A stretch of 64,000 nucleotides of DNA, from the IMG/VR virus record IMGVR_UViG_3300025141_000016, positions 186,001 to 250,000 of that record. The stretch is one strand, 5' to 3'. The position numbers and the translations under genes were made by a program. The notes beneath the pieces were generated by a model that did no database searches, was not told where the DNA came from, and saw only the letters and a list, made by a program, of their open reading frames with translations. This document shows, piece by piece, positions 7,501 to 64,000 of this stretch (positions are counted from its first letter, which is position 1; every line of letters starts with the position of its first letter).

Positions 7501-9144
7501 GCTGAAGGGGATTACCCTGGCGAGTGTGAGTGGAAAGGCAAGAAGGGCCTATCGTTTACCCCGGATGCCATCGAATACGTCTGGTTAGGTAAGCGGGCAG
7601 GCAAACCGTTCGATGAGGCGAAGGCCGAGCTTCACCAGTTCATTCCCGACCTCGACGTGCGGTCGGAGGCCCCACCTTCGGGCAACAGTCCGTGCCGAGT
7701 TGCCTCCCGGTTCCGCAGGATGGAAGCGGGGCTCCTACAAGCCCCGCCGAAACTCGTCAAAGCCGTGACCGAATGGGCACAGGCCACCTTCGCTGACCGC
7801 GCCCACCACAACGCCCTGGCCAAACAGGCCAAGTTCGACCGGACAGGAGCCGGAATCATCGGGGGTCAGGACACCCTCGATCTGTGGTTCAAGAGCATGA
7901 AGCCTTGGAAGCGCACCTCCGCTGGGAAAGGGGGTGAGGTGTCCACTACGTTCGACCTCACCGACTACCTTGATGGTTGGCGGTATCGGCACCTCTGGGA
8001 CAACCTCAATGCAGGCGAGCAACGTGCTCTCCGCAAAGGCCCTCTCCGTCCGATCACCGTGACCAACGCTTTTGATGAGGGACGTTCGGGTGCCATGGGT
8101 GCTTGGTCAGACAAGAGACATGAGTTCCAAGTGTGGCTCCCCGCCGATGTCTGGATGCCAGAAGTCATCCCCGACCTTGTGGAGAAGCACGACAAACTCA
8201 TCCCGAAAACCGTTCGCCACGAGTTGCAGCACGCCACCCAAGTCATCCTCGGTGCCTTGACGGGTCAGGATTACGGGGGCCTCCCGAAACGGAAGGTGAG
8301 GCAGCCTCACAGCATCGAGGAACAACGCCAGAAGCAGATTGAGGACAACGCATCCGCATCGCGTGAAACCTTCCGCTTTCCACCAGACACGTCCAGCCCA
8401 CGCGACGACCGACGGCGAGATCGGTATTACCGCTCTGATCTGGAGTACCAGACCTCCCTCACCGATGCCGTGGGCGATTGGGAGTCCGACTCCCTACCTC
8501 CGGTGCAACGATGGTTGGACGAGACGGACCTCAATGACCGCGACAAGGGCAAGGTGCTTCGGTGGGCTGTTCGCACCTTCGTCGGTGAAGGGCGAGCACG
8601 GTTCCCCACCCTTCCGCGTGACTTCAAACGCCCTGACTGGAACCCAGGCAAGATCAAGCCGTCCGAGTTCTTTACGCACATCAAGGGCGACCGGGAGCGG
8701 TGGGCAGATGCCGTGGCGACCTTTTACAAGGAGATCGCCCGCACCACCAAACTCGCCCGCCGTGTAGCTACCCGGTATGCGAAGCGTGACTACCCGAAAG
8801 CCGGAGGCTCCGTGAGTGGGCTGCGGGTCAAAGGGGATGCCCCCAACCAGAACTCCATCAGCGCCTCGTTCTCCGACTATGAAGTGCTCCCCGACGTGCG
8901 AGAGGTACCCCTCTCCGACTTCGATGCCGCACCACATGACATGTTCTACTCGGCAAGTGACCTGGGGAGGGTCCGAGAACTCGCGGAAGCCATCGAACAC
9001 AACGGCTGGATTGCACCTCTCATCGTGGTCATAGACGATGACCCCAAGCCGTACATTCTGGAAGGAGCACACCGACTCGCCGCACTGCACACCCTGTCGA
9101 AACGAACCTTCCCCGCCCTCGTGGTGAGAGACCTCGACGGATGA
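4585..9144 (+). CDS. polyvalent polyprotein: papain-like, ParB-like, zincin, GNAT, GNAT, unknown, zincin, ParB-like; tag-B linkers
   Basis: GACY...AHAF...LDARG; DGHHR; HELTH; LRGKGFGKLLY; QGWGPLLYDL; HELQH; LEGAHRL. Modules are separated by SRVASRF/Y, RRVATRY and [KR]TA. Confidence 0.85.
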   Translation: MMPRPSHKRVARRYASRTASEAERFPHGPNGPKADEWFRAWRARIGPYMRGACYDLAGFLHDEGGFPVWGVIDEDGIIAHAFAYNPRIRKGLDARGEVDPEDMMDGVIGAESVRPLTKKENRSLCSRWGSDERDFAQQFGKYLWDLRGSRLGAALRTATSTKIPAKTVYAGGWEWNKGGFADWPSFRRKPKREQIAWAKEYVGSGIREPVEVTVYSDGGVGFTDGHHRVMAGTLLDIEIPVRVKSRNFDKDLWPDLLALLKAGYTPKQYNPQGWKLTNSGVPPLEVVRRGPNAADEWIMSNERVKTAARPIRLPTREIKALAKKLAQRLYQWGLPKPGRVIAQEYLPLTNVMGDEVEVEILLTGTPNKWRDPFSSELVQGGFALTHKRSDNPLVRIFVNPDLGTRTFEMRPRRIVESELYEILAHELTHAADTWLGKGSAVGALEGLGPGSHHNHPAEVKALMRDVVTHLEDGEYVRELMGYGMDFNTAFREALKETQWPDIEPYLTPKNQKTILKGVYTHLQDQGLTKAASRTAGGFRRIIDEIEDKTGLEAKVEAGADNIKIELKRGTKIVGYFRASTVDPNSFQWKGAPLDCKEAWGQIGEPPVWIVRGALLSWWLRGKGFGKLLYKALFSHIASKKGVVGPNRCSGGNTSPDAQRVWKSLRSMYPKHGPLIDLRKMASASRVASRFRRMEAGMRTVKDLPDDWYVEITGSLSNLGIYLLDGDDNTVGSLDIHRTGDFLQINEIQARQGWGPLLYDLAMEVANEFNDEGLMPDRSSVSREARAVWEHYLNRRSDVEATLLPEWVHELAGSGHVRTHLDRYEPDSPLSYSYRKTTGNPFMRQLALQGQLESDDYSFDLPRAAASRVASRYAGRAYCICWPTDGLLYVEVPSYDHLRNLLLTQKWRGDAHLRTKDGYVPYFGGGIAFSFTKMRMKGVHPVWYIRKGFTKQQAVAHLVEDGLFVSERDALRHAEGDYPGECEWKGKKGLSFTPDAIEYVWLGKRAGKPFDEAKAELHQFIPDLDVRSEAPPSGNSPCRVASRFRRMEAGLLQAPPKLVKAVTEWAQATFADRAHHNALAKQAKFDRTGAGIIGGQDTLDLWFKSMKPWKRTSAGKGGEVSTTFDLTDYLDGWRYRHLWDNLNAGEQRALRKGPLRPITVTNAFDEGRSGAMGAWSDKRHEFQVWLPADVWMPEVIPDLVEKHDKLIPKTVRHELQHATQVILGALTGQDYGGLPKRKVRQPHSIEEQRQKQIEDNASASRETFRFPPDTSSPRDDRRRDRYYRSDLEYQTSLTDAVGDWESDSLPPVQRWLDETDLNDRDKGKVLRWAVRTFVGEGRARFPTLPRDFKRPDWNPGKIKPSEFFTHIKGDRERWADAVATFYKEIARTTKLARRVATRYAKRDYPKAGGSVSGLRVKGDAPNQNSISASFSDYEVLPDVREVPLSDFDAAPHDMFYSASDLGRVRELAEAIEHNGWIAPLIVVIDDDPKPYILEGAHRLAALHTLSKRTFPALVVRDLDG

Positions 9145-10478
9145 TCAAACCCTCTGCCAGCCGTGTTGCCTCCCGGTATGCGGGCCGCTCTGTCCCTCCC
9201 TTCAAGGTTCGGGATGCGGCGGCGAAGACACCTTCGGATCTGCCCGATGGGTGGTATGTGGTTGCCCGCTGGGTCGGCCCGTCGAGGTCATTCCAGTTGT
9301 ACGACGGAAAGAAAGAGGTCGGGTATATCCGAGCGACCCCGAACTCCTCCTGTGGTGGGGCCTATACGGTGCGTCAAGTATGGGCACCCTCCGGTTGGGG
9401 TCCGATGCTCTATGACCTGATGATGGAGGATGCGGGTCGTTATGGGGTGATGCCGGATCGAAGTCAGGTATCGGAAGACTCCGCTCGTGTTTGGTTCCAC
9501 TACCTCACGAAACGCCGCCGTGATGTGACCGCACACCCTTTGTGGGATGACCCCTCCATTCGTGATGATCGGGCGTGCGGCTATCATTATGAAGATACTG
9601 GTCCCGGTGTGTTTGAGTCCTTGGACTATCGGTACGTCAAGGACGGTCGCGGAGTGACGGGCTCACTGGAGCGTGAGGGCAGGCTCTTTGAAGGTGAGCA
9701 TCCCGAGTGGTCCGGTGTCCGAAAAGAAGCTGTGGCGCAGCGGTATGCGAAGCGACCCTTCGACCTCGCCATGAACGGACTGAAAGGTCTGGACGAGGGA
9801 AGGACCGTGACCCTGTACCACGGCACCACACGATCCTTCGACCGCTTTGACCTCACCAAGTCCAGGGACGAACTCGTCAACGACTTCTACGGCAAGGGGA
9901 TCTTCCTGACCCCATCCAAGAACGTCGCCTGGAAGTACGCCAACGCCAACCGGAACATCGGCCTCGACCCCAGCATCATTGGCGAACTGAAACGCAAGAA
10001 GCCCCAGGCCGGAGCCTTTCTGGAAAGCCTCTACTCCCAGGGATCCGATGCCTGGGAACCCATGCTCGCAGAAGCCAAAGCCGCAGGGCACGAACCCTAC
10101 GAGCACGAGGACTTCCTCAACGGGGTGGACGGGAACACCCTCGGTGACATAGCGGGGTACATCGAAGGGAGTGCAGTCCCACCACGCGGGGGCGGCTCAA
10201 CCAACATCTTCTCGACCAGTAGCGGTGCCCCCTACTGGCTCTACGACACCCTCGATGAAGTGGGCCTCGACTCCTCGGCGTACCGACCCAAGGTCTACAC
10301 CGTTGGGGTCACCGTACAGAACCCCCTCATCACCGCAAGCGCATCCGAAGCCCGCAAGGCAAGAGCCAATGGCTACGACAGCGTGGTCTTCCACGGCTCT
10401 CGGCTGGTCGATGGCTGGCCCGAGGTCGCCGTGTTTTCACCCAGGAACGCCAAGATCAAAAAGGTCGAGGTCGAGTAA
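9141..10478 (+). CDS. tag-B protein: GNAT plus ADP-ribosyltransferase-like (ART-PolyVal type) domain
   Basis: SASRVASRY; GWGPMLYDLMME; LYHGT...YGKGIFLT...GYDSV...EVAVF. Confidence 0.8.
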   Translation: MIKPSASRVASRYAGRSVPPFKVRDAAAKTPSDLPDGWYVVARWVGPSRSFQLYDGKKEVGYIRATPNSSCGGAYTVRQVWAPSGWGPMLYDLMMEDAGRYGVMPDRSQVSEDSARVWFHYLTKRRRDVTAHPLWDDPSIRDDRACGYHYEDTGPGVFESLDYRYVKDGRGVTGSLEREGRLFEGEHPEWSGVRKEAVAQRYAKRPFDLAMNGLKGLDEGRTVTLYHGTTRSFDRFDLTKSRDELVNDFYGKGIFLTPSKNVAWKYANANRNIGLDPSIIGELKRKKPQAGAFLESLYSQGSDAWEPMLAEAKAAGHEPYEHEDFLNGVDGNTLGDIAGYIEGSAVPPRGGGSTNIFSTSSGAPYWLYDTLDEVGLDSSAYRPKVYTVGVTVQNPLITASASEARKARANGYDSVVFHGSRLVDGWPEVAVFSPRNAKIKKVEVE

Positions 10479-10494
10479 GCAAGTCACCCCACCC

Positions 10495-10596
10495 ATGAAA
10501 CCGGAACCCCATGAAATCCCCTCGTGGGTACTCATAGTGCTGATAGCAATCGTGGTCGGAGCCGTCCTACTCTCGGATTACTTGCGCCTGAAATGA
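10495..10596 (+). CDS. small single-TM peptide
   Basis: MKPEPHEIPSWVLIVLIAIVVGAVLLSDYLRLK fills the intergenic gap. Confidence 0.4.
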   Translation: MKPEPHEIPSWVLIVLIAIVVGAVLLSDYLRLK

Positions 10597-10598
10597 CC

Positions 10599-10613
10599 CG
10601 GTGACTTCCCTAT
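10599..10613 (+). promoter_or_regulatory. class L promoter motif
   Basis: CGGT-GACTTCC-CTAT, 30 nt before ATG 10643. Confidence 0.65.
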
Positions 10614-11824
10614 CGGACCCGTAGGGTCAGGAGAAACTAACCATGTCCAAGACCATTACCGCTTCTGACCGGAGCCGATTGATTCGACTCGCTTCAACAA
10701 TGTCTGCTGGCTCTCCCGAGCGGAAGGCCATCCTCGCTGGGTTGTCAAAGACCGCTGGAGAACACCCGCTGGGCCGCATGGCAATCGTCTACTTCGATTT
10801 GATCATTGAGGCTTACAACATTGAGGAGGACGCGGAAAACGGTGACGAGTTCGCACAGAGCCTCATGGATGATGGTGGTCGAGGTATGAACAAGTTGGAG
10901 GGTGACGCTCTCAAAAACCTGTCCCGCATGTTCGGACAGCGAATCAGCAACGAGGGGCATGGCCCCGACGGCGCACTTGTCTGCAAGTTCCCAGTGAACT
11001 CGTGGGCAGAGGTCAAGAAAGCCAATGACGTAATCAACAAGAACCACACTGGCGGTGACGATAACATCGACACGGGCGTTCAGTACGTTGAGGCACGGGA
11101 CTTTCGCCTCCACCCGGAGGGCGTGGGACAAAATCAGGCTTTCTACGGTGAGCACTCCCGTGCAGAGGGTGATTGGGACGAGTGGCTGTCCGACCACAAG
11201 TAATCCCTATCGGACCCGTAGGGTCAGGAGAAACTAACCATGCCCAAGACCATTACCGCTTCTGACCGAGCCAGCTTGATCCGGCTCGCTTCCTGTCTAC
11301 CCGTAGAGCGGAAGGCAATCCTGGCTGGGCTCCAGAAGACGGCAGCCATGGAGCCGTGGGATTCCCCCGATTACGTCTTTGAAGACCCAAAGGATGAAGA
11401 TGACTACATCACTCTCTTTGAGGAAGGGACCACACGCCACTACGATGTGAACGTCTCTGGCCGCGTGGATTCAGCGAAGGATGGGCTCCTCCTACTCCAC
11501 AAGGAGTTCGGTCGTGGGGGTAAGGAAAGCCGCGACTTTGAGGGTCAGTACCTCTGGGGGACAGGCTACTCCATCACAGCGATCCCCCCAAACAATCTGT
11601 CCTATGAGCGGTGGCATAACGACAAGGCCCACTTGGCAAAGATCCACAAGGTTCTGGACAGGATCAAGAAGATGCCAGGAGTCAAAAAGGTCAGCTTGGA
11701 GGAACGGCCCGACAGTGCAGACCTGCATAAGAAACAAGGGCAGGCCATGAAGCGGTGGGTCGCCAAGGGTCGGACCCTGCGAACTGCGAAGAAGACACCC
11801 TATCGGACCCGTAGGGTCAGGAGA
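10608..11824 (+). repeat. three exact 27-nt leader repeats CCCTATCGGACCCGTAGGGTCAGGAGA
   Basis: Copies at 10608-10634, 11205-11231 and 11798-11824, each followed by ATG and a tag-A coding sequence; internal hairpin GACCC-GTA-GGGTC. Confidence 0.95.
10643..11203 (+). CDS. tag-A protein, hypothetical cargo
   Basis: MSKTITASDRSRLIRLASTMSAGSPERKAILAGLSKTA. Confidence 0.85.
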   Translation: MSKTITASDRSRLIRLASTMSAGSPERKAILAGLSKTAGEHPLGRMAIVYFDLIIEAYNIEEDAENGDEFAQSLMDDGGRGMNKLEGDALKNLSRMFGQRISNEGHGPDGALVCKFPVNSWAEVKKANDVINKNHTGGDDNIDTGVQYVEARDFRLHPEGVGQNQAFYGEHSRAEGDWDEWLSDHK

Positions 11825-12244
11825 TACACCATGCCCAAGACCCTCACCGCAACTGACCGATCCCGATTGATCCGGCTCGCTTCCACTATGGCTGCTGGCT
11901 CTCCCGAACGGAAAGCGATCCTCGCGGGCTTGGAGAAGCAAGGGGGTGCGTCGAAGACGGCCTACAGCGACAAGTTTGGTCTTCGGTTCAACTTTCGGGA
12001 CGGTTTCTCATTCACGACGGTCCCTGTTGACCCCCCCTACAACCAGACATATTCGGGCTTTATCCTGATAAAGAAGCCCGGACGGGTGAAGGCGTACAGA
12101 GCGGCGATGGCCTACGTCAACCAGAACCGTAGGGAGATCGAACGCATGAAAAGAACAAAAGATGTTCTCGGTGCCATCAACGACTACGCCCGTCAGGTGA
12201 GCGGTAAGGAGCCCTACTGGCACCGATACCTGATGCCAGACTGA
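11240..12244 (+). CDS. double tag-A protein (in-frame fusion of two cassettes; internal start at 11831)
   Basis: Tag A at the N-terminus and again at ATG 11831, which has its own leader repeat and RBS. Confidence 0.85.
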   Translation: MPKTITASDRASLIRLASCLPVERKAILAGLQKTAAMEPWDSPDYVFEDPKDEDDYITLFEEGTTRHYDVNVSGRVDSAKDGLLLLHKEFGRGGKESRDFEGQYLWGTGYSITAIPPNNLSYERWHNDKAHLAKIHKVLDRIKKMPGVKKVSLEERPDSADLHKKQGQAMKRWVAKGRTLRTAKKTPYRTRRVRRYTMPKTLTATDRSRLIRLASTMAAGSPERKAILAGLEKQGGASKTAYSDKFGLRFNFRDGFSFTTVPVDPPYNQTYSGFILIKKPGRVKAYRAAMAYVNQNRREIERMKRTKDVLGAINDYARQVSGKEPYWHRYLMPD

Positions 12245-12259
12245 TTAGGAGATCCCACC

Positions 12260-12784
12260 ATGCCCAAGACCATTACCGCTGCCGACCGATCCCGATTGAT
12301 CCGGCTCGCTTCCTCGATGCCCGTAGGCTCCGATGAGCGGAAAGCCATCCTCGCTGGGTTGAGGGTTGCTGACCGCGCTATCGACAAAGCCGTGGACTAT
12401 CTGGTGAAGGCCCAGCGTATTCTCTCGGGAGTCCCCGGATGGGGCACTGCTCCGTATGGGGGGTATGACCGCTCCCTGACCGAGTTGATCAAGGTCTTAC
12501 GGGCCGGACCCAACAAGAAGGCTTCAGCTTCGTTGAAGGATGTGCTGCGAAAGTGGCCCGAGTTTGCCCCCGAGATCCAAAAGGAACTGCGAGGGCTGCG
12601 GGCGGCGTTGCGAGGCGACCCCGACTTCGGGCGCGTGAGTAATGCCCTCATACAGATCCAGATGCGGCTGGAAGACGACCACCGCAGAGACCCAGCGGCT
12701 TTCCATGCCCGCGCACCCTTCAACAAAGCACTCGCTGACTTTGCAAAGGCCGAGTACGAACACAAGACGGGCAATAAGTGGTAG
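12260..12784 (+). CDS. tag-A protein, hypothetical cargo
   Basis: MPKTITAADRSRLIRLASSMPVGSDERKAILAGLRVA. Confidence 0.85.
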   Translation: MPKTITAADRSRLIRLASSMPVGSDERKAILAGLRVADRAIDKAVDYLVKAQRILSGVPGWGTAPYGGYDRSLTELIKVLRAGPNKKASASLKDVLRKWPEFAPEIQKELRGLRAALRGDPDFGRVSNALIQIQMRLEDDHRRDPAAFHARAPFNKALADFAKAEYEHKTGNKW

Positions 12785-12797
12785 GCAGCGTAACGCC

Positions 12798-13082
12798 CTA
12801 CGCCTCTCCAACCACGTCCGAAGCCTTGTACTGGATGAGGGCATCAATCTCGTCACGGAACTCGATGAGTTCCGTCAGCGTGAACACACGAGCATCCTTC
12901 AACACACTCTCGGGGAACACCGCGATGGTCGATTGCGTGTCCTCATGGATGGAGGTCGCGATCTCACGAACCTCCTCCACCTCGTAGGGAGTAGCATCAT
13001 CCGCTACCACCAACACGATGAGGTCATACCGACCAGCCCGTAAAACCATCTGCCGAACCGCTGCTTGGCAAGCATCACCCAT
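12798..13082 (-). CDS. hypothetical protein
   Basis: Member of a tightly packed minus-strand run. Confidence 0.55.
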   Translation of the reverse strand: MGDACQAAVRQMVLRAGRYDLIVLVVADDATPYEVEEVREIATSIHEDTQSTIAVFPESVLKDARVFTLTELIEFRDEIDALIQYKASDVVGEA

Positions 13083-13097
13083 TGACCAACCCCGTCT

Positions 13098-13427
13098 CTA
13101 TACCTGATCGGGAACGATAGACAGCCTACCTCTGCCGTCCTCGACTGTAGAGCACCGCTCGCATGGCTTCTCCGGGCCACACGTCTCACAACGACCAGCC
13201 AAAGCCCACGGGAAGGTGCCCTGCGGGTTCTGGGAAGCAACCTGAAGGTGACCGCCAGACGCACGGTACTCGTCCGCTGTCACCAAGGCTTGCGCTAACT
13301 CCTCCCCCAACCGCCGTACCTCACCCTCCTGGGCCGGGTCCGTCATGTCGAACAACAGGTGAACACTCTCCTCGTCAGAACGCACACGCTCCGGGTTTAC
13401 AAACACCAACTTCATCCATCTGCTCAT
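13098..13427 (-). CDS. hypothetical protein with C-terminal Zn-ribbon
   Basis: CETC...CERC; GAGG RBS. Confidence 0.65.
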   Translation of the reverse strand: MSRWMKLVFVNPERVRSDEESVHLLFDMTDPAQEGEVRRLGEELAQALVTADEYRASGGHLQVASQNPQGTFPWALAGRCETCGPEKPCERCSTVEDGRGRLSIVPDQV

Positions 13428-14711: not shown

Positions 14712-15061
14712 GGGAACGTCCTCTGCTGGGTTCTGGGTTCCTCTACCTGTACCGGCCAACACCCCCTCTCGCACCCCCCTGTAGGAGTCCCCGCCCCCGA
14801 AACGCAATACTTGAAACGTACTTGTGACTACTCGATACATGGCCCATGTGACAGTCACAATCGTGAATGAAGTATTGGGGCTCCTGGGTATCGGGTTTCG
14901 CCCACCGTTAGCGGGGGGTTGGGGAGGCCGAATACAAGGTGGTTGTGATTATCACGAACACGATCCCTCCCTGTGAGGCCCGCCAATCCAGAGAACAAGT
15001 CAAGCCCCCGGAGATTTTTCTGGCATGGGGTTTGCATGGGAAAATACTGTATTGGGTAAAT

Positions 15062-15157
15062 GTAACTGTTAGGTTTGCAAACGTAACTACATGGTATGCA
15101 AACGTAACTGTATTGGTTGCGTTTGTGACAGTCACGATTGGCGTTCGTGACTGTCAC
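15062..15157. repeat. phased array of 11-bp palindromes GTRACWGTYAC (five units, some degenerate)
   Basis: Units start at 15062, 15083, 15104, 15125 and 15147 (spacing 21, 21, 21, 22); a lone copy at 14848. Confidence 0.85.
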
Positions 15158-15175
15158 ACCCAAAACCCCAAACGC

Positions 15176-16200: not shown

Positions 16201-16274
16201 GAGAAGTCTCCATTGGCCCGTCATTCGGGCTCGTGGGGGGTGTTTTGTGTGGGTAGCGGGGCTCCCTACACTCC

Positions 16275-16307
16275 TATACGGAGAAGCAAGGGGGAGTTGA
16301 ACCCCCC
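16275..16307 (-). promoter_or_regulatory. class E promoter GGGGGGTTCAAC-N15-CGTATA
   Basis: One of eight copies with invariant spacing. Confidence 0.8.
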
Positions 16308-16328
16308 TCCGTCGAGAAAGTTGAGGGT

Positions 16329-16610
16329 TTAGAACGGCATGTCTTGGTCGTCTGCGGCCCAGGCGGGGATGACGGGTTGGTCCTGGGGCACCACAATGTC
16401 ATCCCCCGACGGCGTGTACCCGTAGATTTCGGCGGCAGTGGGCTCCCGCTCGTCCTCGTCCGGTTCGGGTCCGTAGACCACAGCAGCCAGGAGGTCGTGG
16501 CACCGTGCGAGTTCGGCTTCCTGCTGCTCTGGGAGCAGGGAGGGTGAGCGGTAGCCAGCGAGGGCGAAGTACGCCTCGCGGATGGTGGAGAGCAGTTCAG
16601 CGTGGGTCAT
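16329..16610 (-). CDS. hypothetical protein
   Basis: GGAG RBS; acidic C-terminus ending DDQDMPF. Confidence 0.65.
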   Translation of the reverse strand: MTHAELLSTIREAYFALAGYRSPSLLPEQQEAELARCHDLLAAVVYGPEPDEDEREPTAAEIYGYTPSGDDIVVPQDQPVIPAWAADDQDMPF

Positions 16611-16789
16611 GTGGCTCCGGGGGTGGTCTGTTCGGGCGAAGGTGCGTCAGGGTGCCATCCACACTTGAAGCAGCCCTTCCTCGTGTAGATGCCCACCTCT
16701 CCTTTGGGGAGGAAGGTCACGACGTTCTTGATGGCCTTTTTCTTACCGCACTGTTGGCACTTGGTCTTGATGGTCATGGTGCCGGTCAT
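16607..16789 (-). CDS. small Zn-ribbon protein
   Basis: CQQC...CFKC. Confidence 0.55.
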   Translation of the reverse strand: MTGTMTIKTKCQQCGKKKAIKNVVTFLPKGEVGIYTRKGCFKCGWHPDAPSPEQTTPGAT

Positions 16790-16807
16790 GGGAGGTTCCA
16801 GAGAGGG

Positions 16808-16984
16808 TCAAAGGGTGTAGTCGATCTCGACCACCCCCCGCTCGGGGGCGGGGTCCGGTCGTTCCAGCACAGGACGGGGAGGCACAGGACGAGGTGCATA
16901 GAGGGGGAGCCGTCGGCGCTCGCTCTCGCGTTCCTCACGCTCGCGGCGTTCGCGCTCGATGATGGCTGGGTGGATGTGGGTCAT
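16808..16984 (-). CDS. 58-aa charged protein (below the ORF-track cutoff)
   Basis: MTHIHPAIIERERREREERESERRRLPLYAPRPVPPRPVLERPDPAPERGVVEIDYTL; GGAGG RBS directly after a class E promoter. Confidence 0.7.
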   Translation of the reverse strand: MTHIHPAIIERERREREERESERRRLPLYAPRPVPPRPVLERPDPAPERGVVEIDYTL

Positions 16985-17001
16985 AGTAGGGCCTCCACCC
17001 T

Positions 17002-17034
17002 TATACGGAGATAGGGGGGTGAGTTGAACCCCCC
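17002..17034 (-). promoter_or_regulatory. class E promoter
   Basis: GGGGGGTTCAAC-N15-CGTATA. Confidence 0.8.
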
Positions 17035-17052
17035 AAAACCAAGTATTCGGGT

Positions 17053-17138
17053 GTGACAGTCACGTTTTGGGCGCGGTTTTGCCTGTGACAGTCACGTTTG
17101 AAAACGTGACTGTCACGTTTAGGGGGTGTGACAGTCAC
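17053..17138. repeat. palindrome array (four perfect GTGACWGTCAC)
   Basis: Units at 17053, 17085, 17106 and 17128. Confidence 0.9.
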
Positions 17139-17156
17139 GTTTAGGGGGTGTGGGGG

Positions 17157-17453
17157 TCAAGCGGTCCCTGCGGTGGCCTCGACCTCTTCCCAGCCGAAGG
17201 AAGCGCATCGGAGGACACGTCCATCCGACAGGCGGATGCGGTCACCGACGGAGGTGGAGCGGCATCCCTCACCAGGGAAGGTCGAGGTGACCAGAGCGTT
17301 CTCCCACCAGTAGTGTTCGATGGTGTTGGTCAGTTCAAAGACGCGGGGGTAGTCCGCGTCGGGCAGGTCCACATCAGCGACGTGGATGAACTCGGTGGGC
17401 TCCGGCCCGGACCCGAAGGTGGGGCGAGTGGCGTGAAAGACTGCGATGGACAT
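17157..17453 (-). CDS. YodL-like domain protein
   Basis: VFELTN...RSTSVGD...FGWEEV resembles the YodL RS[LM]SVGD motif; ATG 17453. Confidence 0.6.
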   Translation of the reverse strand: MSIAVFHATRPTFGSGPEPTEFIHVADVDLPDADYPRVFELTNTIEHYWWENALVTSTFPGEGCRSTSVGDRIRLSDGRVLRCASFGWEEVEATAGTA

Positions 17454-17547: not shown

Positions 17548-17548
17548 C

Positions 17549-34410: not shown

Positions 34411-35205
34411 CTACGCAGCGGTCATTTCGGCTACGTCCTGCTCAAAGTCGGACTTCCAGTTGGGGCGCTTCCGCATAAGGCCCAGGTACAGCAGCCGCCC
34501 TTTCTTGGGATTGATGCTGACTGGGTAGGGGCGTTGCTGGGACATGATGGTGAAGATCACGTCACCGCCTTTGGTGTACTTGAAGCCCATGATGTAGCCG
34601 GAGTAGTACGGTCCCTTGCGGTCCTCACCCTTCGCCGTGCCTCGTTCCTGATACTGTTGGACGACGTGCTTGCGGTAGGGTTCGACCTCGCCAGCCTTGG
34701 CGAAGTAGACCACTTCCATGTGCTGCTTCGCGGTGCCTTCGCTGTACTGGCTCTTGGGGCTGTAGCGGTAGAGGCCGGTCTTGGTTCCGGTGGAGTGTCC
34801 GAAGAAGCGAGCGGTCTGGCCGTTCTCAAACTTGACGAGAACGCCATCCTCATCAATCTTCTCGACGGTACAGGGCTTGTACTTGAACTGGTCGGCTACG
34901 TCTTGGTTTTGGGGCGGGGCCTTGTCGGGCTTGGGTAGGAGCATGTCGCCCACCTGAATGTTCGGCCCGCGCTTGGTCTTCTTGGTGTACGGGGTCGGCT
35001 CTCTGCCGAGGATCTTCTCCAGATACGTTTCCATGGCGCGTGGGGACATGGGGTCTTGGTTGAGGACGACCCAATCAATGAACTGGGAGGTTTCTGCTTT
35101 GAGGGCAGTCCTCTGGTGCAGCCCGGACAGGATCTCTCGCCGCTCCTCTGACCCCACCGGAAGTGTGGCGGCCTTACGAATGAGGGTTCTCCGGTCAGTG
35201 CTCAT
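34411..35205 (-). CDS. tag-A protein, hypothetical cargo
   Basis: MSTDRRTLIRKAATLPVGSEERREILSGLHQRTA. Confidence 0.85.
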   Translation of the reverse strand: MSTDRRTLIRKAATLPVGSEERREILSGLHQRTALKAETSQFIDWVVLNQDPMSPRAMETYLEKILGREPTPYTKKTKRGPNIQVGDMLLPKPDKAPPQNQDVADQFKYKPCTVEKIDEDGVLVKFENGQTARFFGHSTGTKTGLYRYSPKSQYSEGTAKQHMEVVYFAKAGEVEPYRKHVVQQYQERGTAKGEDRKGPYYSGYIMGFKYTKGGDVIFTIMSQQRPYPVSINPKKGRLLYLGLMRKRPNWKSDFEQDVAEMTAA

Positions 35206-35558
35206 CACAGCCCCTTGATCTTGTCGTCAATGTCCCTGGCGATAGGGGCGAGTTTCTTCAGCGCGGAGTCGAGGTTGCTGATGATCTCCTCTCGGAGTGC
35301 GCGGAGCCCTTTCTGGTCGCTGCCGTGTTCCTCAATCCAGAGGGCTAAACCATCCTCGGGGTCATCGAGGTAGGTCCACTTGGCCGCATCATGCACAGCC
35401 TTGACGACCCCCTTGTAGAACTCGGCATTGAGTTTCTGGATCTCGCGGGAAGGCGGGTCAGACCGACCTCCCCGCTTCAGGGCAGCGAGGATTTCCCGGC
35501 GCTCCTCTGACCCCTTGGGGAAGGAGGCAGCTTTTCGGATAAGGGTTCGGCGGTTCAT
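35205..35558 (-). CDS. tag-A protein, hypothetical cargo
   Basis: MNRRTLIRKAASFPKGSEERREILAALKRG. Confidence 0.85.
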   Translation of the reverse strand: MNRRTLIRKAASFPKGSEERREILAALKRGGRSDPPSREIQKLNAEFYKGVVKAVHDAAKWTYLDDPEDGLALWIEEHGSDQKGLRALREEIISNLDSALKKLAPIARDIDDKIKGL

Positions 35559-35578
35559 CGGTTCCTCACTTCTTTGGG

Positions 35579-35944
35579 CTACGAGAGGTAGGCCACGACC
35601 TCAAATCTGTGTTCATCAAGTTCGTGATACTGGAGATAGAGCATCGAGTTGGAGATCGCTGCTCCCGGCATGAAGGGGTTGGGGTCAGTGCTGACGAACT
35701 CGATGTCCGACCTCACTGTTCCGCTGGGGCGTGGGGTGAACTGGTGGGATGAGGTAAGCCCATCCACGGTGACCCCGAACTTCTGCATGATCTCGGCGGC
35801 CTTTGCGTAGCCTCTGGTGGGGCTGGCAAAGCGGCCATTCCCGTCCAGACCTGCCCGCTCCATCGCCTTGTTGATCTTCATGCGGAGGCTGCGGTCGATC
35901 TTCTGGACCAAACCCTCGGCGGCAAGAATCTTTCGGAGGCTCAT
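35579..35944 (-). CDS. hypothetical protein
   Basis: Starts MSLRKILAAEGL; ATGA overlap with the tag stub upstream. Confidence 0.75.
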   Translation of the reverse strand: MSLRKILAAEGLVQKIDRSLRMKINKAMERAGLDGNGRFASPTRGYAKAAEIMQKFGVTVDGLTSSHQFTPRPSGTVRSDIEFVSTDPNPFMPGAAISNSMLYLQYHELDEHRFEVVAYLS

Positions 35945-36015
35945 TTTGACCCCTTGGGGAAGGATGCTCGGCGGATCAATCGGCTTCGGTCAGCGGCGGT
36001 CAGGCTCTTGGACAT
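35941..36015 (-). CDS. 24-aa tag-A stub
   Basis: MSKSLTAADRSRLIRRASFPKGSK*; TAATG and ATGA couplings; not in the ORF track. Confidence 0.6.
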   Translation of the reverse strand: MSKSLTAADRSRLIRRASFPKGSK

Positions 36016-37886
36016 TAGTACAGGCTCTCTTCAGCGCGGTGTAGGACTGCGTTCAAGGTGACCAAGGTATCGAGAACCCTCCCCACCTCGGAGGACTCCC
36101 CATGCTTTCGGGCAAAGGCTTTCATCGTCTTGTGGAGAGAATCCACAGCCCTACGATCTGGGTCACTCACGGAGGGGAAATCGACCTTGGCACTGGAAGC
36201 GGTCTTCAGGGCAGCGAGGATGGATCGCCGTTCCTCTGACCCTTTGGGGAGGCGCGAGGCGAGTCGGATGCGGGCGGCCCGAGCGGTGGGGTCACGGCGC
36301 TTCGACCCGTACTTGTCCATCGAGCCGGTGGTTTCGTAGGCGGCTTCTTCCAGGGCTTCGTTGATCGAACCCCCACCAGTGTCGTCGGCGTACTGGCCGA
36401 GTTTCTGTTTCAGATACCGTTCCAGAACCTTGATGCCCCGGTCCCCATCTACGAAGTAGTGGTCCCAGTCACCGTCCCAGATGCCGACTCCCTCACCACG
36501 GAGGGTCATCAGCACGAGGTAGGCGGCCCCGTCGTCCAAGAGATCATCGACCTCCATGTCTTCAACGAGAGCATCGGCGTTCTTGCGGTGCCACTCCTCC
36601 ATCGCCTTTTCCAAATCCTGCTCAAACTTCTTGGCGAGAGCCTTCACGGCGCTGGTAGCTTCCGCATCACGGCTGTTGTCAAGGTCAGCGGATTCCGCCG
36701 CCCCTTCGGCCAACCAATCAAGTGTTCGGGGGGAGAGCCCCCGTTCGTGTCGGCCAGCCGTTCGTGTTGCTGCCATCCTTTCCGAGTGGCCGCCTTTCTC
36801 TGCTTGCTTCACGAGCCAGTCGGCACCGTCGCCGTACATCTGGTGGGATCTCCCTGACTGACCCTCAAACTTCTTGCCTCGCATCCGGTCGAAGTCCACG
36901 CGGCCCTTGGGGGTTTCGGCGTAGAACTCTCCGAAGCCCATGTGATGCACGGAGACTCCAGAGACACGCTGGCACTTGTTGATGAACGCGGTGTCCACAT
37001 ACCACTTGCGGTCGGAACCTTGGTGGTGGCCTGCTGTCTTGCCTGGGGCATGGGGCTTGGAGAAGTCCACAACCCCTTCGTTGAGGAGTTTGGCAGCCGA
37101 GGGCACTTGTTTGGGGTCAATGACAGGCATCTGCTTCCGGTCGGGTGCCCAACCGGGAACCTTCTGGCTCATCAGCTTGACGTTTTCCGCCATCTGGTCG
37201 ATGCCCGCCTCTACGGATCCGAAGGCTTTTTCCAGGGTGGCCTTCACGGCATCGGCGGTAACAGGGAACTCCCCTCCGATGCCCGTTGTCGTGTACTCTT
37301 CCAGCAGCTTTCGGACGTTCCCCGGCTTGAAGTCAGCGATTGCTCCCTTCCCCGCGTTGCCGTTGCGGACCTTGAACTTGCCCTTGCTGATGATGTTGAG
37401 GACTTTCAGCAACTCCTTACCGGGAAGGCCCGCAGCGTATCCTCCAACCTTGCCTTTGGAGCCGCCCGCGAGGATGGTCGCTGCCCAACGATGGTGACCG
37501 TCCAGAATGTGTTTGTCTTTTGAGACGATAGCTCCAAGGTCACCACCAATCTTGTCTTTCTTCAACATCCCCAAGGCCATCCCGATAGCCTTGGGGAGAA
37601 CCATTGTCTTCTGGGATGGGTTGAGGGCGGTAGCTGCCCAGGATCCCTTCCCGGCGCTGACCACATCGTCCCCCGAGTTGCCGTCACTCAGTCCCGACTG
37701 GACAATGTATTTGGCCACTGTGGGGTCAACTGCGTCCAGCTTGCCTGCGCTCGCGACTGCCTTTTCGATCTCCTCGGGCGTAGGAACACCTGAATATGCG
37801 GTGAGGTCGGAAGCCAGACGCACAAGGGCAGAACGGTATTCTGGGTGCTGGAGTGCGAGGTTCAGAATGAGGCGGCGGTTGAGCAT
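36015..37886 (-). CDS. multi-module tag-A protein with a ParB/Srx-like domain
   Basis: ILDGHHRWAA; GKTAG and TRTAG junctions; internal RIRLASRLPKGSEERRSILAALKTA. Confidence 0.8.
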   Translation of the reverse strand: MLNRRLILNLALQHPEYRSALVRLASDLTAYSGVPTPEEIEKAVASAGKLDAVDPTVAKYIVQSGLSDGNSGDDVVSAGKGSWAATALNPSQKTMVLPKAIGMALGMLKKDKIGGDLGAIVSKDKHILDGHHRWAATILAGGSKGKVGGYAAGLPGKELLKVLNIISKGKFKVRNGNAGKGAIADFKPGNVRKLLEEYTTTGIGGEFPVTADAVKATLEKAFGSVEAGIDQMAENVKLMSQKVPGWAPDRKQMPVIDPKQVPSAAKLLNEGVVDFSKPHAPGKTAGHHQGSDRKWYVDTAFINKCQRVSGVSVHHMGFGEFYAETPKGRVDFDRMRGKKFEGQSGRSHQMYGDGADWLVKQAEKGGHSERMAATRTAGRHERGLSPRTLDWLAEGAAESADLDNSRDAEATSAVKALAKKFEQDLEKAMEEWHRKNADALVEDMEVDDLLDDGAAYLVLMTLRGEGVGIWDGDWDHYFVDGDRGIKVLERYLKQKLGQYADDTGGGSINEALEEAAYETTGSMDKYGSKRRDPTARAARIRLASRLPKGSEERRSILAALKTASSAKVDFPSVSDPDRRAVDSLHKTMKAFARKHGESSEVGRVLDTLVTLNAVLHRAEESLY

Positions 37887-59178: not shown

Positions 59179-60201
59179 GTGAATCACCCGGACCCCAAAC
59201 GAGTTGCTATCGCTGTGTCTCCGCAGCATCAGGCGGCTCGGGTAGCGGCTCGCTACGCCTCCTCCCCTCTGATAAAGGAGTTGGAGGAAGACTACCATTC
59301 CCTCTGGCATGACAAGCATGAAAGGGAGGACGGAAAGCCTCGGCTGTGCCCACTGAAAGCTGGGGTGCCCGATTGTGAGAAGATGACCCTCAAAGAGTTC
59401 GTTGCCAAGTGGAAGAGGCACGGGCTGAAGGCGGTAAAGGTCCAACGGCTTCCTACCACCTACTCCTACTATGACTGTGGGAGCCACGCCACGCTGCGGA
59501 CGGAACAGATCCATGGCAGCCGACTTTACCCCCAAGGCGACATCACGGTTGACTTGAACACCCCCATTCCTTGGAGCAAGGCGAAGAAAGGCGACTGGGT
59601 TCAATGGCCATGGCACCACGGAGTGGTGATTGATCCCAAGCGCAAGATTGTGGAGAGTTGTTGGGGGGTAGACGGATGGGTGTTTCAACACCCCGTAGAC
59701 CTTTCTACTTATGGGGCGAAGCCTACGGTTCATTCCGTGCATCCAAAAGAGAAGACCAAGACCGCCAGTTCTGATGGTCAGTGTATCGTCGGAGGCCAGT
59801 GCTTCCGCTACGCTGTCATGTGGGATGGCAAAGGCCCAGGATCATCCCCTGACGACATTGTTGTTCACGGGAACGTGCATGGCTTGGTCGGTCCTCACGC
59901 CTGGGTCGAGCGGAAGGACGGTCGCGTATTTGACTGGCAGACGGTTGAGGGGATCTGGGAGACGCTTGGCCGTCAACCTGACCCCAGCTACACCAAGCGC
60001 GGCTGGCCGAAGCGTGAGTTCTACGCGGAGTTCAAGCCGCGCAAGATGAAGCGGTACACCGCCGAAGACGCGCTGATCAACGGGATACGGAACCGGCACT
60101 ACGGTCCCTGGGACGCGGATGAGGAGTACCGTCCTCCAATCCGATCAGCATCGCGGGTTGCCGCTCGCTACTTGATGGCTTCTCGGCGGCAACGCCGGTA
60201 G
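59179..60201 (+). CDS. tag-B protein with two papain/transglutaminase-like (Cys-His-acid) domains
   Basis: AARVAARY; YDCGSHA...HHGVV...VESCWG; KTKTAS junction; GQCFRYA...PHAWVE...VFD; C-terminal SASRVAARY. Confidence 0.75.
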   Translation: MNHPDPKRVAIAVSPQHQAARVAARYASSPLIKELEEDYHSLWHDKHEREDGKPRLCPLKAGVPDCEKMTLKEFVAKWKRHGLKAVKVQRLPTTYSYYDCGSHATLRTEQIHGSRLYPQGDITVDLNTPIPWSKAKKGDWVQWPWHHGVVIDPKRKIVESCWGVDGWVFQHPVDLSTYGAKPTVHSVHPKEKTKTASSDGQCIVGGQCFRYAVMWDGKGPGSSPDDIVVHGNVHGLVGPHAWVERKDGRVFDWQTVEGIWETLGRQPDPSYTKRGWPKREFYAEFKPRKMKRYTAEDALINGIRNRHYGPWDADEEYRPPIRSASRVAARYLMASRRQRR

Positions 60202-60210
60202 CTTCTTTAT
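60196..60210 (+). promoter_or_regulatory. class L promoter motif (TTAT variant)
   Basis: CGGT-AGCTTCT-TTAT, 34 nt before ATG 60244. Confidence 0.55.
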
Positions 60211-60243
60211 CTCTCCGATAAGGTCAAGTACCGGAGACAACCC

Positions 60244-60693
60244 ATGTCCAAGACCCTTACTGGATCTGACCGTAAACGCCTCATCCGCCTTGCTTCTACC
60301 CTCCCCACGGGGTCAGATGAGCGGAAGGCTATCCTTGCTGGGCTTCACCATGTCGCCGTCCACAAGACCGCCTCCAAGAAGACCACCCTCTCGGCAGATT
60401 TGAAGTTGAAGGACGGGACCGTGTACGCGAAGGGATCGCGTGCAGAGGTGTTCTTCTCGGAGCGCAACCCCTCCATGTCCGAGGTGGAGATTGAGGGTAG
60501 GAAGATCAAACTCCGCACGGTCAGTCTCCACAAGTACCTCCGTGGTTTTCCAAAGCCCCCCTCCACGAGAGCCTTGCAGAAGATGGACAGTGAGGCTTCC
60601 GGGCCAACGGTCAGTGGGGTACGCAACGTCGAGATGGACGGCTATGGTCCCGATGGGTCACCCTCGTGGATGCTGGCCATGGGGCTCATCTGA
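60244..60693 (+). CDS. tag-A protein, hypothetical cargo
   Basis: MSKTLTGSDRKRLIRLASTLPTGSDERKAILAGL...HKTAS. Confidence 0.85.
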   Translation: MSKTLTGSDRKRLIRLASTLPTGSDERKAILAGLHHVAVHKTASKKTTLSADLKLKDGTVYAKGSRAEVFFSERNPSMSEVEIEGRKIKLRTVSLHKYLRGFPKPPSTRALQKMDSEASGPTVSGVRNVEMDGYGPDGSPSWMLAMGLI

Positions 60694-62684: not shown

Positions 62685-64000
62685 ATGAATCGCTACGCTG
62701 CCGCTTTGGTTCGTTTGGCGGTATCCCTGCCGTCAGGGAGCCGTGACCGCCGAGTGATCCTTGCTTTGATCAAAGAGGCGGGAGCCCGTGAGGATTTTCT
62801 GGCTCGCTACGAGTTCCTTGGGGGGCTCACCGGCAAGTCGGGTGATCGGGTCAAGAGTGATCTGAAGCAGGGCGACTACGAGCCGTATGTGAAGGCACTT
62901 GCCGCTAATGGCTGGGACGAGGGCACCGCACAGCGCCCCGGAGAGGCCCTTACGTTCGTTGACCCCACGGCCAACATGGGGCTGTGGACGGCTTTGGTGA
63001 GGGGCGGAAACTCGGCCTTGGGCCGTGCCGTGGACGAGGTGGCCAAGTGGCAACCTGCCCTGTCAGGAATCTCTGGTGAGGATGTTGCCCAGGTACTCTC
63101 ACACGGGGGTCAACACTGGCCTGGGATGCGCTTCGACTCTCGCGTGAAGAATGAGAAAGGTGGCTTTGGTGATTATGTCGAGCGCGTGAGCGGCGAGGAG
63201 CCCTACGCGACTGGAGACAACATCTTCCGGTCTGTCGGGAAGGAACTGAAGTCCAAGAAGTTCAACCTCGCTTTCATTATCAAGAGGTTGATGGGGATTG
63301 CCCGCAACAAGACGAAGGATTGGGTCCGCTCGGTGGATGCCGGGAAGTGGGAGGGACCATTCCCCGAAACCGAGGAAGGCCAGCAGATTGTCCCGAGGGG
63401 ATACACACCCCCGGACCCTGCTGACATGCTCACCAAGGAGTTGTATCTGAAAGCCATCGATCCCGTGATGAAGCGGGTGTTGGCTGATGCCCCTGCACAG
63501 GCTCGGATTTGGGAGGCTCTGTTGGCTTCCGTCCAGGCCAACAAGAACTTTCTTGGGGTATCCGCGAGAGGAAAGGGGGAGGGTGATGTGACCCTGGAGG
63601 GCACGAAGTTCCGTCCCTTCATGGAGAAGTATTTTGAGGGGCAGACGGATGAAGACGACAACCCCATCCGAATCCCCACCACCCAGAAGATCGCCGCAAA
63701 CTTCCAGAAACTCCTGAAGAAGATGAGGGCTGCGTTGGCGGGTCTTTCCGACGCAGAGTTGGCCAAGGGGCTCCCGAGACAAGACCGTGAGATCCTGAAA
63801 GACCGTGACATAGCGAGTGTCTACTGGTCGGAGGTCCATCGTCGCCGTCGGGCTTTGCTCATTCGTATGGCTTCCACGTTCCCCGTGGGGTCAGAACACC
63901 GCAAGGTGTTGCTCCGGCAGGCATCGGATGTGGGGGCGAAGGACGTGTTGACCGAGAAATCGCTCATCAAGTATTTGAAGGCGACGGGGGATACTGTCTC
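62685..64000 (+). CDS. tag-A protein with a possible ECF-sigma-like domain, runs off the right edge
   Basis: Not in the ORF track; open from ATG 62685 to the window end. Tag A at the N-terminus and at about 63850; SGEDVAQ, RLMGIARNKTKDWVR, KLLKKMRAAL between them. Confidence 0.75.
   Translation, partial: MNRYAAALVRLAVSLPSGSRDRRVILALIKEAGAREDFLARYEFLGGLTGKSGDRVKSDLKQGDYEPYVKALAANGWDEGTAQRPGEALTFVDPTANMGLWTALVRGGNSALGRAVDEVAKWQPALSGISGEDVAQVLSHGGQHWPGMRFDSRVKNEKGGFGDYVERVSGEEPYATGDNIFRSVGKELKSKKFNLAFIIKRLMGIARNKTKDWVRSVDAGKWEGPFPETEEGQQIVPRGYTPPDPADMLTKELYLKAIDPVMKRVLADAPAQARIWEALLASVQANKNFLGVSARGKGEGDVTLEGTKFRPFMEKYFEGQTDEDDNPIRIPTTQKIAANFQKLLKKMRAALAGLSDAELAKGLPRQDREILKDRDIASVYWSEVHRRRRALLIRMASTFPVGSEHRKVLLRQASDVGAKDVLTEKSLIKYLKATGDTV

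What the first reader, a model, noticed from the sequence alone, without database searches (positions are those of the whole stretch)
10608..12370. Cassette array caught in the act of forming a polyprotein
Seen: the 27-nt leader CCCTATCGGACCCGTAGGGTCAGGAGA precedes tag A three times. At 11205 it follows a TAA stop. At 11798 there is no stop, so the leader is translated in frame (PYRTRRVRRYT) and fuses two cassettes, while the internal RBS and ATG 11831 remain intact. A fourth tag-A gene follows at 12260 without the full leader. The pattern is a constant leader+tag (about 130 bp) alternating with unrelated cargo. Inference: a cassette array maintained by homologous recombination, with stop-codon loss explaining how internal tags and long polyproteins arise.
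Basis: partly seen in the sequence, partly recalled or inferred. Interest (0 to 1): 0.78.

Follow-up and report, generated by a model that had tools for sequence, protein, structure and literature searches.

The report
Tagged phage gene cassettes fusing together
In a giant uncultured marine phage, small genes that all start with the same 35-residue helical tag sit in a swap-prone array, and two of them have merged into one reading frame, which shows how this phage group can build its long multi-part proteins.

Summary
Three exact 27-nt leaders precede tag-A starts. The third leader is read in frame inside a 334-aa ORF, with its ribosome-binding site and ATG 11831 intact. An independent assembler reproduces that junction at about 31x depth. 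The cargos share only the tag. In a 93-99% identical strain, window 10695-12246 is replaced by two other cargos, with breakpoints in the tag and at the ribosome-binding site. Cargo 3 is free-standing in at least four relatives and is fused to a different partner in a fifth. The window fusion is therefore probably young. It needs a spacer 1-2 nt shorter, not just a lost stop before the leader. Tag A is an uncatalogued helix-loop-helix module found in 1,758 protein clusters. It occurs at N-terminal, internal and C-terminal positions, and a third of non-N-terminal copies keep a fossil Met. The leader is the 3' part of a general promoter-like box, CGGTAG-N5-CTAT. No cleavage is shown, so 'polyprotein' is unproven. 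I infer, by analogy with T4 capsid-targeting sequences, that the tag is a shared docking or delivery handle. This is a new variant of known phage cassette shuffling.

The parts
10495..10596 (+). 33-aa predicted membrane protein gene; conserved left flank of the variable site
   Evidence: Sequence read; conserved in L040.
10599..10642 (+). Leader copy 1: degenerate box CGGTGA-N5-CTAT, the exact 27-nt repeat at 10608-10634 including AGGAG, and a 9-nt gap between AGGAG and the ATG
10643..11203 (+). Cassette 1: tag A (10643-10744) plus unrelated cargo 1; 186 aa; TAA stop
11205..11239 (+). Leader copy 2, 35/35 identical to copy 1; lacks the upstream CGGTAG half of the box
11240..12244 (+). 334-aa fused ORF: tag A + cargo 2 + translated leader + tag A + cargo 3
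11798..11830 (+). Leader copy 3, translated in frame as an 11-residue linker; the spacer is 2 nt shorter than in copies 1 and 2 and has no TAA; AGGAG retained
11831..12244 (+). Cassette 3 (tag A + cargo 3). It could also be made alone as 137 aa from its own ATG. Model: tag helices 7-18 and 25-37, low-confidence linker 38-48, alpha/beta cargo
   Evidence: free-standing homologues P0103 and P0152.
12245..12259 (+). Remnant leader before cassette 4: AGGAG plus spacer only
   Evidence: The L040 orthologue has the full box plus leader.
12260..12784 (+). Cassette 4: tag A + helical cargo 4; 174 aa; conserved at 99% in L040
10695..12246 (+). Segment replaced in strain L040 by 1,293 bp that carry two other cargos
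   Evidence: blastn breakpoints.
60196..60693 (+). Fifth close tag-A gene (149 aa) with a near-consensus promoter-like box (CGGTAG-N5-TTAT, 1 mismatch) at 60196-60210
34411..37886 (-). Second tag-A array: a 623-aa protein with an internal tag, a tag split by a frameshift (35944-36030), and 121-aa (the cargo of the split tag), ~117-aa (start 35558) and 265-aa genes
62685..64000 (+). Multi-tag ORF with an N-terminal tag and an internal tag at 63822; runs off the window
   Evidence: Its orthologue P0008 carries an extra fused N-terminal tag.

Best explanation
Window 10.6-12.8 kb is a hypervariable cassette site in a huge uncultured marine phage. Each cassette has four parts. The first is a regulatory leader: the CTAT half of a phage promoter-like box, a short 5' region and a ribosome-binding site. 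The second is a 35-residue helix-loop-helix module, tag A. The third is a flexible linker, and the fourth is an unrelated cargo domain. Cassettes are gained, lost and reordered between strains by recombination inside the shared leader and tag sequence (shown by strain comparison). In this strain a 1-2 nt length change in the spacer before ATG 11831 put the upstream ORF in phase with cassette 3. The leader is now translated as a linker, and two cassettes form one two-tag ORF. The downstream ribosome-binding site and ATG remain (shown by sequence), so both a 334-aa and a 137-aa product are possible (inferred). Repeating this step is the likely route to the multi-tag proteins of up to 934 aa that are common in this phage clade. 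The tag itself is under protein-level selection. I infer that it is a common docking or targeting handle that sends any attached cargo to the same destination, most likely the virion for delivery into the host. That inference rests on the T4 capsid-targeting sequences on internal proteins and Alt, and on virion-packaged polyvalent proteins.
For: The junction is reproduced by an independent assembler at depth 31.6 and shows no mismatch in two IMG/VR contigs; a 552-kb JGI contig encodes the identical flanking 445-aa protein. The cargos share only the tag. In strain L040 the flanks are 93% and 99% identical, 10695-12246 is replaced, the breakpoints lie in the tag and at the SD, and its two cargos are themselves fused in a 436-aa ORF. 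Contigs from runs X4 and X8 show further arrangements, including cargo 3 placed after cargo 4 behind its own leader. Cargo 3 is free-standing in P0103 (24 contigs, a different genome neighbourhood, its own leader), in P0152 and in L003. It is fused to an unrelated 400-aa partner in P0188. The tag profile finds 1,758 clusters. Among the top 150 proteins there are 133 N-terminal, 79 internal and 35 C-terminal tags. Many cargo families occur both as first and as internal modules. Met is enriched 2.5-fold at the fossil start position of non-N-terminal tags (33 of 103, p=2e-6). Tag pN/pS is 0.2-0.4 with pS 0.27-0.47, while the leader is 27/27 identical. The tag model has pLDDT 90.8. Tag and cargo are separated by a low-confidence linker. 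The box CGGTAG-N5-CTAT has 13 hits against 1.15 expected, each 26-45 nt before a start codon. Recognisable cargos are effector-like: an ADP-ribosyltransferase, pentapeptide repeats, DUF2958, and a fusellovirus VP2-like virion protein. Neighbouring genes are ART-PolyVal and ParB-like polyvalent proteins. The T4 CTS and polyvalent-protein precedents are in PMC9026906 and PMC5512222.
Against: There are no expression, proteomic or virion data, so production of the fusion and the role of the tag are both inferred. Cargo 2 has no homologue other than itself, so the ancestral state of this exact junction cannot be read. A stop lost by recombination at the leader edge is not excluded. C-terminal tags precede no cargo, so the tag is not simply a leader peptide. 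The tag has no match in Pfam, in PDB sequences or among PDB folds. The loop Glu that would fit a prohead-protease site is not invariant. Leader copies 2 and 3 lack the CGGTAG half of the box, so they may not be promoters. The leader hairpin has no thermodynamic support and only weak covariation support.
Confidence: 0.65

Rival explanations
1. The fusion is an assembly or sequencing artefact: the real genome has a stop or a longer spacer at the third leader.
For: The leader and tag are repeats, and de Bruijn contigs do break at copies 1 and 2.
Against: Copy 3 shares only 27 nt, shorter than Logan's 31-mers. One contig of depth 31.6 crosses it cleanly. Two IMG/VR assemblies show no mismatch across the junction. 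Similar in-frame two-tag ORFs exist in L040 and in many database proteins.
Confidence: 0.03
2. This is an ordinary paralogous family. Tandem duplication was followed by divergence of the C-terminal parts. The tag is simply the conserved N-terminal domain, and no cassette exchange occurs.
For: The genes are tandem, on the same strand and share an N-terminus. The tags are old, with pS about 0.4.
Against: The cargos show no detectable similarity and differ in length and predicted fold class. A nearly identical strain carries different cargos between the same flanks. Cargo 3 sits in an unrelated neighbourhood in L033 and behind a different partner in P0188.
Confidence: 0.08
3. These are true polyproteins. 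Tags A and B are recognition or cleavage sites for a phage protease (a prohead protease, or the zincin-like domains in the neighbouring 1,519-aa protein). Fused cassettes are cut back into single cargos, which makes fusion selectively neutral.
For: Most tags carry S-x-E in the loop. This resembles the S/A/G-x-E rule of giant-phage prohead proteases, which I recall from memory. Tag B sits at module borders in a protein with two HExxH motifs. Polyvalent proteins are proposed to be autoprocessed (PMC5512222).
Against: The Glu is not conserved, whereas Ala, Pro, Gly, Arg and Leu of the fold are. A confidently folded 35-residue hairpin is more than a cleavage site needs. No protease link was tested.
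Confidence: 0.2
4. The read-through is a recent neutral or mildly harmful accident. Cargo 3 works only as the 137-aa product from its own start, and the 334-aa product has no role.
For: The ribosome-binding site and ATG are intact. The leader is unchanged, so the event is young. The fused protein is known only from this phage.
Against: Multi-tag ORFs are common and include old fusions with diverged tags and no Met, so such fusions are often retained.
Confidence: 0.3
5. The leader acts mainly as an RNA element (a terminator, a processing site or a stabilising hairpin) rather than as part of a promoter.
For: The leader contains an inverted repeat directly before the ribosome-binding site. Pairing exceeds shuffles in 22 relatives (65.8% against 58%, covariation 0.20 against 0.11).
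Against: Folding z-scores are near 0. RNAalifold predicts no consensus structure. Sliding the partners by one column gives a similar covariation score. There is no T-run and no Rfam match. The most conserved letters are CTAT and an upstream CGGTAG, at a fixed distance from start codons of many genes.
Confidence: 0.15

Closest known systems
T4-type internal proteins and Alt with capsid-targeting sequences (CTS)
   Same: A short shared N-terminal peptide is attached to otherwise unrelated, fast-changing small proteins and to an ADP-ribosyltransferase. The peptide is thought to let phages load varied cargo into the head for injection (PMC9026906). In the window, tagged genes lie beside ART-PolyVal and ParB-like genes.
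   Different: The CTS is 10-19 residues, N-terminal and cleaved by gp21. Tag A is a folded 35-residue helix-loop-helix. It also occurs at internal and C-terminal positions, shows no sequence similarity to the CTS, and neither packaging nor cleavage is shown for it.
PeSL mobile regulatory cassettes of T4-type phages (PMC2839356, PMC4122927)
   Same: Repeated promoter-containing intergenic motifs flank orphan genes in hyperplastic regions. They serve as crossover sites for insertion, deletion and replacement between close strains.
   Different: A PeSL is a sigma-70-like promoter plus a G/C stem-loop terminator and is non-coding. Here the shared unit has a different box (CGGTAG-N5-CTAT) and no terminator features. 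It extends about 100 nt into the coding sequence, so recombination and small indels can also join proteins.
Polyvalent proteins of phages and conjugative elements (PMC5512222)
   Same: These are long proteins that string together many unrelated effector domains and are predicted to be delivered with the DNA. ART-PolyVal, ParB-like and HExxH modules lie next to the array.
   Different: No recurrent border module and no stepwise origin from single-module genes was found in that paper by a term search. Here each module carries a recognisable tag, and an intermediate fusion state is visible.
Polymorphic toxin loci with orphan modules (Rhs, CDI); recalled from memory, not tested here
   Same: A constant region is followed by variable C-terminal cargo, and arrays are swapped by recombination in the constant part.
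   Different: Those orphans are promoterless fragments paired with immunity genes. Here each unit is a complete gene with its own leader, and no immunity-like partner is seen.

Membership tests
PeSL cassettes (T4-type phages) | Sigma-70-like early promoter in the repeat | tested here: not met
   No sigma-70-like site in 10300-13200. A different conserved box is present.
PeSL cassettes (T4-type phages) | Adjacent stable stem-loop that acts as a terminator | tested here: inconclusive
   A short inverted repeat is present, but folding z is about 0, there is no T-run and covariation is weak.
PeSL cassettes (T4-type phages) | Repeats flank orphan genes, and strain differences have end points in the repeats | tested here: met
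   L040 against the window: breakpoints at 10694 (in the tag) and 12247 (at the SD). Further arrangements appear in X4 and X8.
T4 capsid-targeting sequence proteins | Short N-terminal propeptide of 10-19 residues shared by unrelated cargos | tested here: not met
   The shared part is a 35-residue folded hairpin. Among the top hits it is also internal (79 copies) and C-terminal (35 copies).
T4 capsid-targeting sequence proteins | Removal by the prohead protease at a conserved site | not testable with these tools
   No proteomic data exist. The candidate S-x-E in the loop is not invariant.
T4 capsid-targeting sequence proteins | Presence in the virion and ejection into the host | not testable with these tools
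   No cultured phage carries the tag.
Polyvalent proteins (Iyer et al. 2017) | Two or more distinct effector domains in one polypeptide | tested here: inconclusive
   The 334-aa ORF joins two unrelated cargos, but neither has a recognisable effector domain.
Polyvalent proteins (Iyer et al. 2017) | Domain repertoire such as ART-PolyVal, ParB and zincin peptidase in a phage context | tested here: met
   This holds for the neighbours, not the array. ORF 9141-10478 and ORF 45505-49248 hit ART-PolyVal. ORF 4585-9144 hits ParB-like PHROGs.
Integron gene cassettes | attC-type imperfect inverted repeat at the 3' end of each cassette | tested here: not met
   The inverted-repeat scan found none at cassette borders. 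The shared unit lies 5' of each gene and is partly coding. An integrase was not searched for.

The most novel reading that the evidence does not exclude
Tag A, and the shorter RVAxR[YFW] tag B, are address labels of a previously undescribed protein-delivery system in a clade of huge marine phages. Any domain that carries the label is docked to a common partner, is loaded into the virion and is injected. Because the label is encoded together with the regulatory leader, cassettes can be exchanged freely and then welded by 1-2 nt spacer changes into polyvalent effectors. This would make the birth of polyvalent proteins directly observable.
Probability: 0.3. Interest if true: 0.8.

Novelty: new variant of a known kind. 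Interest (0 to 1): 0.62.

Why it matters
Long polyvalent proteins are a hallmark of large phages and conjugative elements, but how they are assembled from parts is not known. Here the parts are marked by a recognisable 35-residue module. Free, freshly fused and long-fused states of the same cargo can be lined up across relatives. That turns an evolutionary conjecture into countable events. The tag is uncatalogued, and it is large (1,758 clusters at 50% identity) and almost absent from cellular genomes: one hit in 185,579 species genomes, on a contig of a metagenome bin. If it proves to be a targeting handle, it would identify the delivered effector repertoire of a whole clade of uncultured huge phages from sequence alone. 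It could also serve as a portable loading signal.

Tried and rejected
1. Sequence searches with cargo 2 found only the protein itself.
2. IMG/VR scans with the 445-aa flanking gene and with the leader DNA found only the source contigs.
3. The 12-sequence tag alignment was too diverse for a locus scan. A 5-sequence alignment worked.
4. No family could be assigned to the tag. A PDB profile search gave only a chance 16-residue match in NADH dehydrogenase. Pfam scans of 92 isolated tags, a Foldseek search with the tag model and the ESM Atlas feature search all gave nothing usable.
5. A resemblance of the tag to helix-extension-helix DNA-binding motifs (SAP, Rho N-terminus) is only recalled from memory and was not confirmed, so it is not claimed.
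6. The cargo 3 model (pLDDT 77) has no significant PDB or AlphaFold DB neighbour.
7. The leader hairpin was tested as an RNA structure and not supported. An alternative upstream pairing showed no covariation.
8. There were no Rfam hits and no attC-like repeats.
9. No GenBank phage carries the tag.
10. Concerted evolution of the tags is rejected because they differ at 27-47% of synonymous sites.

Full report
**Observation.** The 27-nt leader occurs exactly three times in the 64-kb window, at 10608, 11205 and 11798. None is expected by chance. Each copy is followed by AGGAG, a short spacer and an ATG that opens a conserved peptide, tag A. The genes are 10643-11203 (186 aa), 11240-12244 (334 aa) and 12260-12784 (174 aa). 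A TAA stop lies one base before leader copy 2. No stop lies before copy 3. Copy 3 is read as PYRTRRVRRYT and runs into a second tag that starts at ATG 11831. Gene 12260 keeps only the AGGAG-plus-spacer end of the leader. Beyond the first 34-39 residues the products show no similarity to each other.

**Is the junction real?** In the probable source run, an independent assembly (Logan) gives one contig of 2,385 nt at depth 31.6. It covers 11239-13400 with a single base difference. Contigs break at leader copies 1 and 2, which share more than 31 identical bases, but not at copy 3. Two IMG/VR contigs (297 kb and 150 kb) show no mismatch over a 17-kb comparison. A 552,571-bp JGI contig encodes the identical flanking 445-aa protein. 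These assemblies may share reads, so they rule out misassembly but not a population minority.

**How the frames were joined.** The leader-to-ATG distance is 35 nt in copies 1 and 2 and 33 nt in copy 3.
- In the 35-nt form, the frame used in copy 3 ends at a TAA inside the spacer. ORF 11055-11237 ends exactly there.
- The frame in phase with the ATG hits TAG inside the leader.
- The third frame stops a few codons into the tag (ORF 11173-11265).

The normal leader therefore closes every incoming frame. Copy 3 lacks the TAA and is two bases shorter, so one small indel both removes the stop and puts ATG 11831 in phase. The spacer of copy 3 also resembles the 34-nt type seen before gene 4, in which case a 1-nt change would do the same. 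Cargo 2 has no homologue other than itself, so the ancestral junction cannot be read directly.

**Cassette exchange.** Locus L040 comes from another marine sample. It matches the window at 93% up to 10694, which is inside the first tag, and at 99% from 12247, which is at the AGGAG before gene 4. Between those points, 1,552 bp of the window are replaced by 1,293 bp that encode two other cargos. Those two cargos are themselves joined in one 436-aa two-tag ORF. In L040, gene 4 has a complete leader preceded by CGGTAG. Contigs of runs X4 and X8 show further arrangements. In X8, cargo 3 lies after cargo 4 behind its own leader, and cargos 1 and 2 are absent from that contig. The tags in the array differ at 27-47% of synonymous sites, with pN/pS of 0.2-0.4, while the leader is identical. 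The tags are therefore old and constrained as protein. They are not homogenised. The leader is constrained as DNA or RNA, or was recently converted.

**Polarity of the fusion.** Cargo 3 exists in three states across relatives.
- Free-standing: P0103 (137 aa, 74% identity, 24 contigs) lies in a different neighbourhood next to helicase and RNA-repair genes, each tag gene there having its own repeated leader. P0152 (138 aa) is free-standing. So is a 123-aa gene in L003 with a diverged tag.
- Old fusion: in P0188 (536 aa) the same module is the C-terminal part of an unrelated protein, with a diverged tag and no Met.
- Young fusion: the window, with leader, ribosome-binding site and ATG all untouched.

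**The tag family.** A profile of 12 window tags finds 1,758 representative proteins at E<=0.001 and 623 at E<=1e-10. Among the 150 best hits plus the window's own fused protein (151 sequences):
- 81 proteins carry two or three tags.
- 133 tags are N-terminal, 79 internal and 35 C-terminal.
- Many cargo families occur as first modules in some proteins and as internal modules in others.
- Met is enriched 2.5-fold at the position where a free cassette would start (33 of 103 non-N-terminal tags, p=2e-6).

The tag is found on 24 IMG/VR loci, many from contigs of 100-297 kb. It was found once in 185,579 species genomes, on a 15.5-kb contig of a metagenome bin, and in no GenBank phage. AlphaFold with 92 sequences gives helix 7-18, a loop and helix 25-39 at pLDDT 90.8. 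In the cassette 3 model, a low-confidence linker separates the tag from an alpha/beta cargo. No Pfam, PDB or fold match exists for the tag or for cargo 3. The recognisable cargos among the 150 are:
- an ADP-ribosyltransferase;
- pentapeptide repeats;
- DUF2958;
- DUF3846;
- a fusellovirus VP2-like domain.

**The leader.** Aligning 22 upstream regions from relatives gives the consensus CGGTAG-N5-CTAT. In the window this box has 13 hits against 1.15 expected. The hits lie on both strands, each 26-45 nt before a start codon, and in front of both tagged and untagged genes, including the UvrD-like helicase. The 27-nt repeat is the CTAT half of this box plus the 5' region. Copies 2 and 3 lack the CGGTAG half. 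The small inverted repeat in the leader has no thermodynamic support and only weak covariation support. No Rfam family matches.

**Interpretation.** Three things are shown: a cassette site, exchange at the shared sequence, and a young in-frame fusion. Three things are inferred: that such fusions feed the multi-tag proteins, that both products are made, and what the tag does. The context includes ART-PolyVal and ParB-like polyvalent genes next door, and a second short tag at module borders of those genes. With the T4 precedent (PMC9026906, PMC5512222), this makes a shared docking or virion-delivery handle the most likely role. The tag also occurs at C-termini and its loop Glu is not conserved, so it is neither a simple signal peptide nor a mere cleavage site. 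The closest known systems are T4 CTS proteins, PeSL cassettes (PMC2839356) and polyvalent proteins. The window element works like a combination of these but meets the defining features of none in full.

Noticed in passing
window 4585-9144, 9141-10478, 52824, 59180; L003 9924 and 11027; L033 1965-2927 and 4080-4850: A second short tag, RVAxR[YFW], often preceded by S/A/P. It occurs five times inside the 1,519-aa ORF, at the N-terminus of the ART-PolyVal gene and of other genes, and at the C-terminus of an RNA-repair HAD protein in a relative. The tag-B module at the start of the 445-aa protein is 40% identical to an internal module (residues 682-803) of the 1,519-aa protein.
   Followed up: partly
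window, 13 sites such as 40975(-), 40999(+), 50573(+), 62626(+): A promoter-like box, CGGTAG-N5-CTAT, lies 26-45 nt before start codons on both strands (13 hits against 1.15 expected). It includes a divergent pair at 40975/40999. No sigma-70-like sites were found near the array.
   Followed up: partly
window 35944-36030 (-) and 35579-35944 (-): A tag-A gene is split by a frameshift in the tag loop near an A-run. The first helix ends as a 24-aa orphan ORF. The second helix plus cargo restarts at an ATG in another frame.
   Followed up: partly
window 4451-4588 (+): A 45-aa ORF made of a tag with a degenerate second helix. Its stop overlaps the ATG of the 1,519-aa polyvalent ORF (ATGA). ORFs 4585-9144 and 9141-10478 overlap in the same way.
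   Followed up: no
L039 (Ga0080013_1000001): The window's 445-aa ART gene (100% protein identity) lies on a 552,571-bp metagenome contig, so the element may be one of the largest phage genomes. Completeness and possible chimerism were not checked.
   Followed up: no
window 16260-24670: Seven copies of a 48-nt intergenic repeat that ends in a G-run, TTGAAC and a C-run (family D5). They lie between minus-strand genes that include the MoxR-like AAA and VWA proteins.
   Followed up: no
window 15055-15160, 17043-17160, 26681-26767, 33533-33557: Clusters of short repeats built on GTGACAGTCAC and AAACGTAAC (families D9, D11, D12 and D14). They may be operator or origin-like arrays.
   Followed up: no
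L040 811-2121: The close strain carries its own two-tag fusion (436 aa) at the same site with different cargos. Its junction keeps the Met but has no recognisable leader.
   Followed up: yes
P0005, P0006, P0009, P0018, P0033 and others: Many multi-tag proteins share two further short motifs after the tags. One is a Cys-containing AGCEKLP...C stretch. The other is an NPNPxGxDxDGDGxTNE stretch that resembles a calcium-binding repeat. A subclass of tags (KKAALVRLAA...) is always at the extreme C-terminus.
   Followed up: no
window 22780-23230 and 38517-38696: Coding tandem repeats: 12- and 15-nt periodic acidic Gly/Asp/Glu-rich repeats in the VWA-domain gene (minus strand), and a 15-nt repeat, apparently Pro/Glu/Ala-rich, at 38517-38696.
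   Followed up: no
window 27645-28944: Two adjacent paralogous endonuclease VII / HNH-like genes.
   Followed up: no
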